Below are positions 33,729-46,283 of a DNA stretch of 64,000 nucleotides, in pieces (the first letter of the stretch is position 1; each line of letters starts with the position of its first letter). A program made the translations under genes and the position numbers. Below the pieces are notes generated by a model. That model had not been told where the DNA came from. It worked only from the letters and a program-made list of their open reading frames with translations, and did no database searches. Origin of the DNA: Diadema antillarum. Its lineage: Eukaryota. The stretch is from NCBI RefSeq assembly GCF_040938485.1, contig NW_027271504.1:2418001-2482000 (forward strand), in the 5' to 3' direction.

Positions 33729-36700
33729 TCAATCTACCCACACTGCAGGTGCGACATCCCTCACAAAGCCAGCATCTTGCATCGATGGAGCTCCCCCAGT
33801 CTCGCCACAGAGGGCAGCATGCACGGCAATACAGCTCTGTGGGTATTCCTCCATGCAAATGGGGCAGGGCACGAGGTCAAAGGTCGTCCCTCCATCACCT
33901 CCCCAAGTCATAGGGTCATCCATGTGACCGAAGGATCCGTCTCCGTAACTCAAACCATGAGGCAAACTCTCATCGCTGCCGCTGCTGTCTAAATCTTGCC
34001 AGTCATGGCTAGCACCCTGCCCCTGACCCCTTCCCCTACCTCTGCCCCTGCTTCTTCCACCTCCAGTGCCACGCCCTCCTGCTGTGGGAATGGTTCGAGG
34101 TGTTGCCAAACCGTATGGCAAAATGTCCCCTCCAGGGATCCACTCGTTGCCGCTATCACTAGAACTGTCTGAATCAAGCCAAGCACTGGAGGATGGGGCA
34201 TTCATGGCTGGGGTTTTCCCTCGCCCCCTTCCCCTTTTGGAACCCCTCCCCCGACCGCCCTGAGCTCTATCCCTTGTGGCTACCCGGTCCTGGTCTGTGT
34301 GTTCACCACCCCATCCATTCCCACCCCTCCCTCTCCCCCTTCCCCTTCCCCTACCCCTTGATCCCCTCTGAGATCCATCAGGAGTCTTCCTTTCACTTTG
34401 GGCCTTCCCAGCCCCACGACCCCTCCCTCTTCTCCCTCGCCCACCCCTTCCAACTGTATTTACATCCTCCATAGTCCCACCTATGGGATCTGGTGTCTGG
34501 CCCTGGAGATCTCCATTATGCTTTGCCACTTTGGGGACCTCGCGGTGCTGTACATTGGAACTGTCTGCGTGTCGCTTGAGATTGTTGAATGAGTTCAGTG
34601 GAGTGGCCTGCTTCTTTCCTCTGCAATCTAAGATGTGGACATTTATCCTGGACGCAGGGTACAATCCTAGACAAAGTAAAGATTCATTGATGGAGGTGTT
34701 GTTATCTGCAGTCAACATTATAAATCTCAAGTAGAAAAGGATTCGTTAATTATACTGCTTATAGCTTGAAATAGACAGCCGCGAAGCAAAGTTGTGTCCA
34801 CATATTTTCTCCAGAGATATGCATACAGTTAAACTCGCCTAAGTCGACGTCGCATATGTTGAATAATCGCTTAAGTCGATGATTTTAAAAAGTCCCAATT
34901 TTTCCCCATTGACTTACGTGTATTAATTCACTCACAAGTTGAATTTTGTAAGTCGAATACTCGCCTAAGTCGATGAAATTCCAAGAACACTTTCACGGAA
35001 AAACCATTAAATTCACTGTGCCTAAGTCGAATAAGATTTTATTGTGTAAAAAATCACTGTCAAAATCACGAGACGCCAGTTTTTGTTTACATAAGACCTA
35101 GCCCGACCACACAGGTGACAAAAAAATGATCTAAAGTATCAAAATTCAAAGCGATCGCATGCGATCGTTGAACTCTCTTCCTGTTTTGAGGTCCGCTGGT
35201 AACAGCCCTGTCGCGCTACGTACGTACAGCGACTGGGCTGTGTATAGTTGTGCGTACAGCGACTGGGCTGTCATAGTCGGTGTATGTTTGCAGTCTGCGC
35301 TGTGCAGTGGAGTGGTATGGATGAAGCTGCTGAGTTGTCAAAGCGGAAAGTAGGGGGAAAGTTACGGGCACGGGTAAATCAGAATTACACCTCTACACGC
35401 ATTTCAAGCCACGGTATGGTAAACTGGAATCAATAACTGCTCAAATATCGTTCATATTCACTTCCCCAAGGTTTAACAAGGGTGTAAAGTAATCGGATCT
35501 GTGCCAATACTAATGCACTGTCCATGCAAAGTTAGCCGCGGCCCTGCCGGGCGACCCGTGCTGCGGCACACCTCTCCAGCTCTCGGCTCCAGGAGTAGAC
35601 AACAAACATGTGTACATTTATACAATGTACGTGTGGTGTAACTGTAAGTCGATGTGTTTTGCTCAGTCCCGAGAAGATCGACTTATGCGAGTTTAACTGT
35701 AATTTTATTTTTGTCCCCGCCGAACGAGTTCGAGCAGGGGACTATGAAACGGGCTCCGTACGTGTGTGTGTCCGTCCGTGCGTCCGTGCGTCCGTCCGTG
35801 TGTCCGTCCGTGTGTGCGTCCGTGTGTGATCAAAATGTTCAAAATGCTACTCCTTCGCCATTTCTAACCCGATTTTGATTCTGTTTGCTTTATATGATAG
35901 CACTACATGGGAGCTTTGAAACTTCTATATAGAATTTCAATTGTGACCTTTGACCTTGACCTTTGACCTATATTGTACATTTTGCTTCAAAATGCTACTC
36001 CTTCGCCATTTCTAACCCGATTTTGATTCTGTTTGCTTTATATGATGGCACTAGGTGAGGGCTTCAAAACTTCTACACAGAATTTTGACCTTTGACTTCT
36101 TTGACCTTTGACCTTGATTTTTACCTATATTGTACATTTTGCTACAAAATGCTACTCCTTCGCCATTTGTAACCCGATTTCAATTCCGTTTGCTTTAAGT
36201 GATGGCACTAGGTGAGGGCTTCAAAACTTCTACACAGAATTTTGACCTTTGACTTCTTTGACCTTTGACCTTGATTTTTGACCTATATTGTACATTGCCT
36301 ACAAAATGCTACTCCTTCGCCATTTCTAACCCGATTTTGATTCCGTTTGCTTTATGTGATGGCACTAGGTGAGGGCTTCAAAACTTCTACACAGAATTTT
36401 GACCTTTGACCTTGATTTTTTTACCTATATTGTACATTGGCTACAAAATGCTACTCCTTTGCCATTTGTAACCCGATTTCAATTCCGTTTGCTTTAAGTG
36501 ATGGCACTAGGTGAGGGCTTCAAAACTTCTACACAGAATTTTGACCTTTGACTTCTTTGACCTTTGACCTTGATTTTTGACCTATATTGTACATTGCCTA
36601 CAAAATGCTACTCCTTCGCCATTTCTAACCCGATTTTGATTCCGTTTGCTTTATGTGATGGCACTAGGTGAGGGCTTCAAAACTTCTACACAGAATTTTG

Positions 36701-45700: not shown

Positions 45701-46283
45701 ATCCAGATTCCATGTTGACAACATCACACGCGCACAAGACTACAGCTGTAAGTTGTTAGACAAGAGACGTAGAGTCAATGACACGTTGATGTCTTGTATC
45801 ACTCAGTGACAGTGCAGTGGTTCACACAAAATAAATGCCTTATTTATTGTAATTTGTATAGATTCTGATAGGCTACCATCATGATAACACAGAAGCATAT
45901 AAATTTCAATTTATATGCCTCTGACTAACACTCAGAATCTTTACTTTTTGTCTTACTTTACTTTAGAATTTAGAACCTTAAATTTAATACATATAGAAAT
46001 TTCATAGTCACACATACCACAGTCATTATAAAATTGCGTCCACAGATATTCAGATAGGTGGGACTAAAAGAACCAGACTCATTTATTTACACGTAAATTT
46101 ACACAGTATACACCACCCAAAGTGATTGACGAGTGGATTAATCAGTCAATAATCAGCCAAATAGACACTCAGTAACTTAGACCAGTGTACCAAGTCGTAA
46201 ATTACGGTAAGATGGATTATTTTCTAAAATAAACTTACCTGGGAGCTGAAAGAAACGACATTTTTGAGCTTCACTGGAGCCAT
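33729..46283 (-). CDS. XNDC1: XRCC1 N-terminal domain-containing protein (XNDC1-like), 973 aa, 10 exons; XRCC1-N + 2 DEK-C-like repeats + 2 UBZ4 zinc fingers + RG-rich tract
   Basis: Exons (minus) 46283-46239, 44200-44062, 43091-42939, 41992-41826, 41241-41123, 39988-39534, 38967-38350, 37934-37724, 37152-37076, 34666-33729 sum to 2922 nt in frame. The N-terminus MAPVKLKNVVSFSSQDSTHRAENLL...QLERAVKIGFIDIGNYGSALIEIQV...DSKLGKNKTGVKMF...WDRVKVICRQPFKKDAQFGLAFI matches my recollection of Xndc1-type XRCC1-N domains. No BRCT domains were seen, so this is not XRCC1 itself. Confidence 0.85.
34826..35699. mobile_element. Tigger/pogo-like non-autonomous element, 874 bp, in XNDC1 intron 9
   Basis: TA|CAGTTAAACTCGCCTAAGTCGAC ... 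TCGACTTATGCGAGTTTAACTG|TA. Confidence 0.8.
35712..36968 (+). mobile_element. Helentron-associated (HINE/DINE-1/pearl-like) element carrying a 7-unit ~157 bp tandem array
   Basis: 5' TGTCCCCGCC and 3' GGCGGGGACA inverted subterminal repeats, a (GTCC/GTGC)n microsatellite at 35760-35828, tandem units starting 35841, 35989, 36146, 36303, 36445, 36602, 36760 (partial 36919), and a 3' hairpin ATTACGC-ACC-GCGTAAT in T-rich flanks. Confidence 0.8.
40783..40864. repeat. ~80 bp palindrome
   Basis: ATGGAATACCAGGGAATATTGCAC / GTGCAATATTCCCTGGTATCCCAT arms. Confidence 0.75.
43357..43565. mobile_element. TA-flanked CTGTAAAAGTGG-type MITE
   Basis: TA|CAGTAAAAGTGGATATTTT ... ACATTTCCACTTTTACAG|TA. Confidence 0.7.

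What the first reader, a model, noticed from the sequence alone, without database searches (positions are those of the whole stretch)
33729..46283. XNDC1-like protein with XRCC1-N + 2x DEK-C-like + 2x KEN + 2x UBZ4 + RG tract: candidate uncharacterised DNA-damage scaffold
Seen: ten phase-consistent exons encode 973 aa. The order is XRCC1 N-terminal domain (exons 1-4), linker, two ~60 aa helical repeats each followed by SNKENGW, a poly-Ser tract, zinc finger CPKCQGLYPASRINVHILDC, a long RG/RGG region, and terminal zinc finger CPICMEEYPQSCIAVHAALC. There are no BRCTs. Knowledge: XRCC1-NTD binds DNA polymerase beta and nicked DNA; C-x2-C-x11-H-x3-C is the RAD18/WRNIP1-type UBZ4 that reads ubiquitin at damage sites; DEK-C binds DNA/chromatin; KEN boxes are APC/C-Cdh1 degrons; RGG tracts bind nucleic acid or PAR and are PRMT targets. 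Xndc1 has, to my knowledge, no established function. Inference: a cell-cycle-regulated adaptor that recruits Pol-beta-type gap filling through ubiquitin and chromatin rather than through the PAR/BRCT route of XRCC1, a parallel repair branch.
Basis: partly seen in the sequence, partly recalled or inferred. Interest (0 to 1): 0.78.

Follow-up and report, generated by a model that had tools for sequence, protein, structure and literature searches.

The report
Sea-urchin XNDC1 orthologue, long form
This is a real sea-urchin gene, the orthologue of the named but unstudied vertebrate gene XNDC1; it joins an XRCC1-type DNA-repair domain to two zinc fingers of the ubiquitin-reading type, which gives a testable idea of the gene's function but does not prove it.

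Summary
Observation confirmed.

Two corrections:
- An acceptor 36 nt downstream in exon 6, supported by orthologues, gives 961 aa.
- The window is a diadematid sea urchin, not a vertebrate. It is 91-96% identical to a Diadema antillarum contig. There the same ten exons are intact, although the public annotation stops at 440 aa.

The gene is the echinoderm orthologue of XNDC1/XNDR, a named but uncharacterised vertebrate gene. It has Pfam XRCC1_N, no BRCT, and the two C-x2-C-x11-H-x3-C fingers carried by 94 of 136 fetched family proteins, from mammals to a mollusc.

- **Fingers:** they resemble solved UBZ4 fingers (WRNIP1 E=3e-4, RAP80, RAD18). They miss Pfam thresholds and keep only some ubiquitin-contact residues.
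- **Helical repeat:** a confident three-helix bundle, DEK-C-like only at fold level. It is single in other echinoderms and duplicated in Diadema.
- **KEN:** not conserved beyond sea urchins.
- **RNA:** none could be obtained.

A ubiquitin-guided repair-scaffold role is plausible but untested. The scan noted a look-alike on another piece of this genome (s1-229835), not examined here.

The parts
46239..46283 (-). Exon 1 (start codon at 46283; aa 1-15), start of the XRCC1_N domain
   Evidence: Identical in D. antillarum locus L001.
44062..44200 (-). Exon 2, XRCC1_N
   Evidence: Pfam XRCC1_N E=1.4e-7, 32 bits against a cutoff of 21.
42939..43091 (-). Exon 3, XRCC1_N
   Evidence: Pfam XRCC1_N E=4.9e-12.
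41826..41992 (-). Exon 4, end of XRCC1_N (domain ends about aa 150)
   Evidence: Pfam XRCC1_N E=8.9e-11.
41123..41241 (-). Exon 5, linker with the conserved motif (S/T)PSWK(S/T)N..F (41149-41184)
   Evidence: Best phase-compatible exon between exons 4 and 6. The motif is conserved in all echinoderms and, as SPW.ANPAF, in vertebrate XNDC1.
39534..39988 (-). The orthologue-supported start is 39952, 36 nt shorter. It holds conserved motif 3 (39838-39930) and the first half of helical module A (39534-39615).
   Evidence: Orthologues lack the 12 residues encoded by 39953-39988.
38350..38967 (-). Exon 7 (618 nt, phase 1 to 1). It holds the second half of module A (38861-38967), SNKENGWLAAKP (38783-38818), the Ser-rich tract (38453-38779) and the first half of module B (38350-38434). 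It is Diadema-specific duplicated material.
   Evidence: Present with one 3-nt indel in D. antillarum and in genomic contigs of a relative. dN/dS 0.51.
37724..37934 (-). Exon 8: second half of module B (37831-37934) and SNKENGWLQAKP (37753-37788)
   Evidence: As a query it hit only 3 clusters among 1.84 billion representatives, all sea-urchin. No amino-acid change against D. antillarum.
37076..37152 (-). Exon 9: HLPAWM motif and the first five residues (CPKCQ) of zinc finger 1 (37076-37091)
33729..34666 (-). Exon 10: rest of zinc finger 1 (34623-34666), RG-rich region (34011-34454), zinc finger 2 (33807-33866), and the stop codon at 33729-33731
   Evidence: Finger profile against solved UBZ4 fingers. 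dN/dS 0.33 for the exon and 0.10 for finger 2 plus tail.

Best explanation
SHOWN: this is the orthologue, in a diadematid sea urchin, of XNDC1 (also XNDR; XRCC1 N-terminal domain containing 1). It is a non-catalytic, mostly disordered protein with small folded units strung along it. These are an XRCC1-type N-terminal beta-sandwich, two short conserved helical motifs, a three-helix module (duplicated in tandem in Diadema), and two CCHC fingers of UBZ4 spacing with an RG-rich disordered region between them. The part conserved from mollusc to mammal is the N-terminal domain, the two motifs and the two fingers. The helical module and the RG region belong to an invertebrate long form that amniotes lack.

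INFERRED (about 35-40% likely): it works as an adaptor in the DNA-damage response. The N-terminal domain would hold a Pol-beta-type client or nicked/gapped DNA. One or both fingers would dock on ubiquitin or a ubiquitylated chromatin or replisome protein; finger 2, with its Pro-Ile beta-loop, is the better candidate. The helical module and RG tract would add nucleic-acid or protein contacts. That would be a BRCT-free counterpart of XRCC1. APC/C control through KEN is not part of this explanation.
For: Identity:
- Pfam XRCC1_N in the window's exons and at 142-181 bits in the full orthologues.
- The N-terminal domain is 49% identical (152 bits) to tammar XNDR, the founding member.
- Phe at the position of XRCC1 C12 and Thr at the position of V86 are invariant in 123 family N-terminal domains, including echinoderms and the mollusc, and differ from human XRCC1.
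- Two C-x2-C-x11-H-x3-C fingers occur in 94 of 136 fetched family proteins.
- Shared motifs SPSW..N..F and L..RL.K...SLGR.A..L.A.
- No BRCT.

Gene reality:
- The same ten exons are intact in D. antillarum (962 aa, all AG/GT).
- dN/dS is 0.30 overall, 0.15 for the N-terminal domain and 0.10 for finger 2; finger 1 is unchanged.

Fold (AlphaFold2 of the S. purpuratus orthologue; module alone):
- N-terminal domain pLDDT mostly 74-92 from about residue 40.
- Module pLDDT 96-97.
- Both fingers beta-beta-alpha with pLDDT 84-90; the rest is below 50.

Fingers:
- The family profile matches WRNIP1 UBZ (E=3e-4), RAP80 (9.8e-4) and RAD18 UBZ (5.5e-3) end to end without gaps.
- Four of the five Pfam families hit most often by single fingers are ubiquitin-binding fingers.
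- Finger 2 has Pro-Ile where WRNIP1 has the Ile44-contacting Pro-Val (PMC4370504).

Module:
- Top structural match is 7z0o chain G, probably the Uaf30 N-terminal three helices (the tool does not name the chain; PMC9020658), Z 6.8. DEK 1q1v scores Z 5.5 at 17% identity.
- DEK_C clusters are first by language-model features and second by shape.
Against: - No functional datum exists for any XNDC1 (PMC12876460, PMC3170594).
- UBZ and DEK_C Pfam models are not reached.
- The helix Asp (WRNIP1 D37) is Ala in the window's finger 2 and Leu in finger 1. Finger 1 has Pro-Lys, as in NEMO, which PMC4370504 argues disfavours the Ile44 contact.
- Residues whose mutation breaks the XRCC1-Pol beta contact are only partly kept. 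V86 is Thr in the whole family, F67 is Leu in sea urchins, and E69 is Gln in vertebrates (V86R from PMC2926592).
- The structural match of the module ties with FF domains and lies below the level the tool calls specific for helical bundles.
- No RNA evidence for the transcript.
- No tree with XRCC1 sequences could be built.
Confidence: 0.45

Rival explanations
1. Same gene and identity, but the fingers are not ubiquitin readers. On this reading the protein is a chromatin- or RNA-associated factor whose C2HC fingers, RG tract and three-helix module bind nucleic acid or other proteins, and the XRCC1-type domain has been reused for a non-repair partner.
For: - The Pfam family hit most often by the fingers is the generic zf-C2HC_2 (9 of 25, best E=2.8e-6).
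- The ubiquitin-contact Asp is missing in the window, and finger 1 has Pro-Lys (PMC4370504).
- RG-rich regions are typical of RNA-binding proteins (established knowledge).
- The Uaf30-type three-helix domain acts as a protein-protein contact (PMC9020658).
- The only mouse knockout phenotype reported is skeletal, fusion of vertebral processes (PMC12876460).
Against: - The end-to-end ungapped matches in the PDB include the DNA-damage UBZ4 fingers of WRNIP1, RAP80 and RAD18.
- Finger 2 keeps the hydrophobic Pro-Ile beta-loop in nearly all members.
- Starfish finger 2 keeps the Asp (HADMC).
- XRCC1_N is otherwise known only from a repair scaffold.
Confidence: 0.3
2. The mature Diadema mRNA skips exon 7, or exon 7 is a cassette exon. 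The main protein would then have a single chimeric helical module and one KEN/GWL motif (755 aa with the downstream exon-6 acceptor), like other sea urchins.
For: - Exon 7 is 618 nt, phase 1 to 1, so skipping it keeps the frame and joins the first half of module A to the second half of module B.
- That pairing is the one closest to the single S. purpuratus module (by eye on the sequences).
- The exon 7 donor (GTTAGA) is weak.
- Exon 7 has the highest dN/dS of the exons compared, 0.51.
- The public D. antillarum model fails inside exon 7.
Against: - Exon 7 keeps an open frame of 205-206 codons in both Diadema sequences, with only a 3-nt indel and intact AG/GT.
- Its dN/dS is still below 1.
Confidence: 0.25
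3. The two KEN tripeptides are working APC/C-Cdh1 degrons that make the protein cell-cycle regulated.
For: KEN lies in a region predicted to be disordered and is kept in the three sea-urchin genera examined.
Against: - KEN is absent from the aligned motif in the brittle star (EDDDGWLQASKP), from starfish, from the mollusc, and from the bat XNDC1N sequence read.
- The conserved residues are GWLQAKP, so KEN looks like a passenger in another motif.
- The second copy exists only because of the Diadema duplication.
Confidence: 0.1
4. It is a divergent XRCC1 that lost its BRCT domains (some databases name the starfish and Lytechinus proteins 'XRCC1-like'), not an XNDC1 orthologue.
For: - Database names.
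- The N-terminal domain also matches human XRCC1 strongly, 121.9 bits.
- Frankenberg et al. found no XNDR outside jawed vertebrates (PMC3170594).
Against: - The two C-terminal fingers, motifs 2 and 3, and the family-specific Phe and Thr are shared with vertebrate XNDC1 and not with human XRCC1.
- 49% identity to tammar XNDR.
Confidence: 0.07

Closest known systems
Vertebrate XNDC1 / XNDC1N / XNDR (Frankenberg et al. 2011, PMC3170594)
   Same: [quoted passage not shown]
- The motifs SPW..N..F and LGRSA..VL.
- Two C-terminal C-x2-C-x11-H-x3-C fingers, mostly CPIC...H..xC.
- Phe and Thr at the positions of XRCC1 C12 and V86.
- Function unknown.
   Different: - The sea-urchin protein is more than twice as long (961-973 aa against about 400).
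- It carries a three-helix module (two in Diadema), a Ser-rich tract and an RG-rich region that amniote proteins lack.
- It is not next to TRPC2 in this window.
- The 2011 paper reported no orthologue outside jawed vertebrates.
XRCC1
   Same: Homologous N-terminal domain (121.9 bits to PDB 1xna) and a non-catalytic scaffold build with long disordered linkers.
   Different: - No BRCT1 or BRCT2, so no PAR or LIG3 route.
- The C12-C20 pair is absent (Phe and Arg).
- V86 is Thr.
- It has CCHC fingers that XRCC1 lacks.
UBZ4 fingers of WRNIP1, RAD18 and RAP80
   Same: - CCHC ligands with identical spacing.
- CP(V/I)C beta-loop in finger 2.
- Predicted beta-beta-alpha fold.
- Profile E-values of 3e-4 to 5.5e-3 against the solved fingers.
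   Different: - Below Pfam thresholds.
- The helix Asp is not kept in the window (HAALC, HILDC).
- Finger 1 has Pro-Lys.
- Ubiquitin binding is untested.
DEK C-terminal domain / Uaf30 N-terminal domain (DEK_C, PF08766)
   Same: - Three helices of similar length and packing (Z 6.8 to 7z0o_G, Z 5.5 to 1q1v).
- DEK_C clusters are the nearest named neighbours by language-model features and by shape.
   Different: - No Pfam DEK_C hit at any E-value shown.
- FF domains score equally well.
- No DNA-binding evidence.

Membership tests
XNDC1 / XNDR | N-terminal XRCC1_N domain (PF01834) | tested here: met
   Exons 2-4 score 32, 46.5 and 42.4 bits against a cutoff of 21. Orthologues score 142-181 bits.
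XNDC1 / XNDR | No BRCT domains | tested here: met
   No BRCT hit in any exon or in eight full-length relatives at E<=1.
XNDC1 / XNDR | N-terminal domain closer to XNDC1 than to XRCC1 | tested here: inconclusive
   - 49% identity and 152 bits (BLASTP) to tammar XNDR, against 121.9 bits (HMMER) to human XRCC1.
- Phe and Thr are shared by all 123 family N-terminal domains and differ from human XRCC1.
- The two scores come from different programs, only one XRCC1 sequence was available, and no tree was built.
XNDC1 / XNDR | Two C-terminal CCHC fingers as in amniote XNDC1N | tested here: met
   The regular expression C..C.{9,13}H...C finds two fingers in the model and in 94 of 136 fetched family proteins. 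All fingers printed have an 11-residue spacer.
XNDC1 / XNDR | Neighbour of TRPC2 (most vertebrates) | tested here: not met
   The window neighbours are Pro_dh, DNTTIP1, an SRPBCC-like gene and EMG1. This linkage is also broken in lizard and chicken (PMC3170594), so it is not a strict criterion.
UBZ4 ubiquitin-binding zinc finger | CCHC ligands spaced C-x2-C-x11-H-x3-C | tested here: met
   Both fingers.
UBZ4 ubiquitin-binding zinc finger | Match to curated UBZ models (zf_UBZ, zf-WRNIP1_ubi, UBZ_FAAP20) at the gathering score | tested here: not met
   Best E-values are 5.5e-4 (zf-WRNIP1_ubi), 0.0021 (UBZ_FAAP20) and 0.011 (zf_UBZ), all below the cutoffs.
UBZ4 ubiquitin-binding zinc finger | Similarity to solved UBZ4 fingers, and a beta-beta-alpha fold | tested here: met
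   Profile A2 against the PDB: WRNIP1 3vhs E=3e-4, RAP80 9.8e-4, RAD18 5.5e-3, all full-length and ungapped. AlphaFold2 gives beta-beta-alpha at pLDDT 84-90 in the S. purpuratus orthologue.
UBZ4 ubiquitin-binding zinc finger | Ubiquitin-contact residues of the WRNIP1/RAD18 class (Pro-Val beta-loop, helix Asp; PMC4370504) | tested here: inconclusive
   - Finger 2: Pro-Ile is kept, but Asp is replaced by Ala.
- Finger 1: Pro-Lys, and Asp is replaced by Leu.
- Starfish finger 2 keeps the Asp.
UBZ4 ubiquitin-binding zinc finger | Binds ubiquitin | not testable with these tools
   Needs binding assays or complex modelling.
DEK_C domain (PF08766) | Match to the Pfam model | tested here: not met
   No hit at E<=1 on the full proteins, and none at E<=10 on the isolated modules.
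DEK_C domain (PF08766) | Three-helix fold like the DEK C-terminus or the Uaf30 N-terminus | tested here: inconclusive
   - Model pLDDT 84 alone and 96-97 in context.
- VIA Z 6.8 to 7z0o_G and 5.5 to 1q1v, tied with FF domains.
- Foldseek found nothing at E<=0.001.
- DEK_C clusters come first by features (0.77) and second by shape (TM 0.66).
KEN-box APC/C degron | KEN conserved in orthologues, in a disordered context | tested here: not met
   KEN is kept only in sea urchins. It is replaced in the brittle star and absent in starfish, the mollusc and the bat XNDC1N read.
XRCC1 proper | Two BRCT domains after the N-terminal domain | tested here: not met
   None found.

The most novel reading that the evidence does not exclude
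XNDC1 is an ancient bilaterian, BRCT-free sister of XRCC1. It would bring an XRCC1-type N-terminal domain, and with it Pol-beta-type gap filling or nick binding, to ubiquitin marks through a pair of UBZ4 fingers. That would be a ubiquitin-directed branch parallel to the PAR-directed XRCC1 route. On this reading the invertebrate long form keeps extra nucleic-acid or chromatin modules (a DEK-C-like bundle and an RG tract) that amniotes lost.
Probability: 0.25. Interest if true: 0.75.

Novelty: new variant of a known kind. Interest (0 to 1): 0.5.

Why it matters
XNDC1 is a conserved, widely expressed gene with no known function. A 2026 paper found zero PubMed results for it.

This work shows three things:
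- The family reaches back to echinoderms and molluscs, whereas the only descriptive paper found no orthologue outside jawed vertebrates.
- The invariant core of the family is an XRCC1-type domain plus two fingers of UBZ4 type.
- Invertebrates carry a longer form with a three-helix module and an RG tract.

Together these give a concrete hypothesis that is cheap to test: ubiquitin binding, Pol beta or nick binding, and damage recruitment. They also give a tractable embryo system in which to test it.

In addition, the work corrects the public Diadema antillarum annotation, which truncates the gene at 440 aa.

Tried and rejected
- **Word search with exon 10:** RG-rich words swamped it. It returned one fragmentary relative and nothing useful.
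- **Single-sequence PDB search with finger 2:** nothing significant. The family profile was needed.
- **Profile of the helical module against PDB sequences and Foldseek against the PDB:** nothing significant.
- **RNA evidence:** no RNA run was listed. The four runs laid on the window proved to be genomic contigs with no splice joints.
- **TRPC2 synteny:** absent.
- **Tree of XRCC1 against XNDC1 N-terminal domains:** not possible.
- **Pfam or structure tests on the window's own spliced domains:** module A, module B and finger 1 are each split by an intron, so they have no reference to hand to a tool. I tested the orthologue sub-ranges instead.
- **Vertebrate origin:** considered at first and rejected.
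- **A merger of two genes:** rejected, because the same colinear architecture occurs in eight other species.

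
Full report
**Gene model**

I translated the minus strand of 33500-46500 in three frames and placed splice sites by hand and by script.

One junction has a better alternative. Thirty-six bases inside exon 6 lies a second canonical acceptor...ctctcaacag|AAGT, which would start the exon at 39952. 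It also keeps the frame. It removes twelve residues that no orthologue has, and it is the acceptor used in the Diadema antillarum prediction. The likelier product is therefore 961 aa.

**What is in the protein**

- Exons 2, 3 and 4 each match Pfam XRCC1_N above the gathering score on their own, and together they cover profile positions 16-148.
- No exon and none of eight full-length relatives has a BRCT domain.
- Two helical repeats lie at aa 333-395 and 538-600. They are 61/94 identical in protein and about 80% in DNA. Each is split by a phase-1 intron at the same point, and the two introns no longer align.
- Each repeat is followed by SNKENGW.
- A tract of 44.6% serine lies between the repeats.
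- aa 733-880 hold 22 RG dipeptides, but only two are RGG.

**Organism and relatives**

Exon 8 (69 aa) was scored against 1.84 billion representative proteins. It hit only three clusters, all sea-urchin:
- a 790-aa "uncharacterized protein" of Strongylocentrotus purpuratus;
- a fragment;
- a 440-aa Diadema antillarum protein.

A word search with the S. purpuratus protein added Lytechinus, three starfish, a brittle star and the gastropod Gigantopelta. It also returned vertebrate "protein XNDC1N" and XNDC1-TRPC2 read-through products.

The window is 91-96% identical in DNA to a D. antillarum contig with the same neighbours. It therefore comes from a diadematid sea urchin, probably not D. antillarum itself (dS 0.10).

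In that contig all ten exons are present. All AG/GT sites are kept and the only indels are in frame, giving 962 aa. The public annotation nevertheless ends the gene at 440 aa inside exon 7 and calls nothing over exons 8-10.

Between the two Diadema sequences:
- dN/dS is 0.30 overall;
- 0.15 for the N-terminal domain;
- 0.10 for finger 2 and the tail;
- finger 1 and exon 8 carry no amino-acid change.

So the 3' exons are under purifying selection as coding sequence.

**Is it XNDC1?**

XNDC1 was described as XNDR by Frankenberg et al. (PMC3170594). They found a widely expressed gene upstream of TRPC2 whose product resembles the XRCC1 N-terminal domain. They proposed a possible repair role and reported no orthologue outside jawed vertebrates.

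The evidence for orthology here is as follows:
- The Diadema N-terminal domain is 49% identical to tammar XNDR.
- In 123 aligned family N-terminal domains, Phe at the position of XRCC1 C12 and Thr at the position of V86 are invariant from mollusc to mammal, and both differ from human XRCC1.
- Outside the domain the family shares (S/T)PSW..N..F and L..RL.K...SLGR.A..L.A.
- Most tellingly, it shares two C-terminal fingers, all with an 11-residue spacer where printed. 94 of the 136 fetched proteins have both.

I could not build a tree with XRCC1 sequences, so orthology rests on these shared features. TRPC2 is not in the window. The neighbours are proline dehydrogenase, DNTTIP1, an SRPBCC-like gene and EMG1.

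**The fingers**

- A profile of 25 fingers from twelve orthologues and the window was searched against all PDB sequences. Among its hits were end-to-end ungapped matches to the UBZ4 fingers of WRNIP1 (E=3e-4), RAP80 (9.8e-4) and RAD18 (5.5e-3). Classical C2H2 arrays scored higher only by summing partial matches.
- Scanned singly against Pfam, the fingers most often touch zf-C2HC_2, zf_UBZ, the autophagy-receptor finger, zf-WRNIP1_ubi and UBZ_FAAP20. All are below threshold.
- AlphaFold2 folds both as beta-beta-alpha with pLDDT 84-90 in the S. purpuratus protein.
- For the WRNIP1/RAD18 class, PMC4370504 names the Pro-Val beta-loop (contact with ubiquitin Ile44) and a helix Asp (contact with Arg42).
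- Finger 2 has Pro-Ile in nearly all members, but the Asp position is Ala in sea urchins. It is Asp in starfish, Glu in the brittle star and Ser in most amniotes.
- The echinoderm finger 1 has Pro-Lys, as NEMO does.

The fingers are thus of UBZ4 type by ligands, spacing and fold, but ubiquitin binding cannot be read off the sequence.

**The helical module**

- Modelled from seven orthologues it is a confident three-helix bundle, with pLDDT 84 alone and 96-97 in context.
- Pfam finds nothing in it, and neither does Foldseek.
- An exhaustive structural alignment puts chain G of 7z0o first (Z 6.8). By length and range this is probably the three N-terminal helices of Uaf30, which contact Rrn5 (PMC9020658); the tool does not name the chain. 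The DEK C-terminal domain scores Z 5.5, with the highest identity among the closest rows (17%). FF domains tie with both, and the tool warns that such Z values are common for helical bundles.
- DEK_C clusters are the nearest named neighbours by language-model features (0.77, a lead only). They are second by shape, after a mollusc cluster of the same family.

"DEK-C-like" is therefore a reasonable fold-level label, not a demonstrated membership.

The module is single in the other echinoderms fetched (two sea urchins, three starfish, a brittle star) and in the mollusc. It is absent from amniote XNDC1. Only Diadema has two.

Exon 7 is in effect the inserted unit: second half of a module, serine tract, then first half of a module. 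Skipping it would keep the frame and give a single module like that of S. purpuratus. Whether it is always included needs RNA.

**KEN**

KEN is kept in the three sea-urchin genera. The brittle star has EDDDGWLQASKP at the aligned place, and starfish, the mollusc and the bat XNDC1N have no KEN there. The conserved element is GWLQAKP, followed by R(D/H)LP.WM. The degron reading, and with it cell-cycle control, is not supported.

**RNA**

No RNA run was listed for the gene. The four runs I laid on 33729-39728 were genomic contigs of this species and a relative. They show no splice joints. One contig of the relative spans exon 8, intron 7 and exon 7, so the duplication is not an assembly artefact of this genome.

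**Function**

Nothing is known for any XNDC1. PMC12876460 lists Xndc1 among genes with zero PubMed results and gives one knockout phenotype, fusion of vertebral processes.

The residues whose mutation breaks the XRCC1-Pol beta contact are only partly kept (V86R from PMC2926592):
- V86 is Thr throughout the family.
- F67 is Leu in sea urchins and Phe elsewhere.
- E69 is Glu in invertebrates and Gln in vertebrates.

I commit to a non-catalytic adaptor of the DNA-damage response that reads ubiquitin through at least finger 2 and presents an XRCC1-type domain. I put this at about 35-40%. The main rival is a nucleic-acid or chromatin role without ubiquitin reading, at about 30%.

**Earlier notes of the scan**

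One note (s1-229835) records a look-alike XNDC1N-like gene on another piece of this genome. I did not examine it; it may be the other haplotype. Another note (s1-220926) records the SRPBCC-like neighbour, which agrees with the gene called in the D. antillarum locus.

Noticed in passing
window 35840-36929 (intron 9 of the gene), more widely 34730-37130: An array of about 157-bp tandem units, 6.3 copies at 91% match, inside a block that is extremely high-copy in genomic contigs of a related species (summed contig depth up to about 10^6). The block is missing from intron 9 in D. antillarum, where intron 9 is only about 265 nt. A similar array lies there inverted in intron 6 (L001 17226-18669). 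It looks like a mobile or satellite element that has landed in different introns in the two species.
   Followed up: partly
L001 10001-22593 (D. antillarum GCA_040938485.1, JBFRCO010000430.1): The public annotation gives this gene a 440-aa product (P0004) that leaves the frame inside exon 7, and it calls no gene over exons 8-10. The locus in fact holds all ten exons intact, 962 aa.
   Followed up: yes
window 37753-37788 and 38783-38818; also 37122-37142: A short motif GWL(Q/A)AKP and a downstream R(D/H)LP.WM are shared by sea urchins and a brittle star. I know of no function for either. They, rather than KEN, are what is conserved here.
   Followed up: partly
window 41149-41184 and 39838-39930: Two short motifs after the N-terminal domain, (S/T)PSWK(S/T)N..F and L..RL.K...SLGR.A..L.A, are conserved from echinoderms to mammals; the mollusc keeps only the second. 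The second is modelled as two helices in the S. purpuratus orthologue (residues 213-227 and 241-250; pLDDT about 59-76). In vertebrates the first motif continues as RRTFF. From memory only, XRCC1 has a REV1-interacting FF motif at a similar distance from its N-terminal domain. I did not test this.
   Followed up: no
window about 33900-34200 (aa about 815-900): Clusters of Ser with Asp or Glu (for example DSDSSSDSGNEW and DSSGSDES) lie before finger 2 and recur in the S. purpuratus and Lytechinus orthologues. They resemble CK2-type sites. From memory, XRCC1 uses such phospho-sites to bind FHA-domain partners. Untested.
   Followed up: no
window 1-8000 (+), 20300-27400 (+), 49400-52300, 57000-63460 (-): The neighbouring genes are proline dehydrogenase (Pro_dh, E=6.6e-24), DNTTIP1/TdIF1 (E=5.3e-17 and 1.7e-6), an SRPBCC-like gene, and EMG1/NEP1 (E=4.8e-16). 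TRPC2, the usual vertebrate neighbour of XNDC1, is not in the window.
   Followed up: partly
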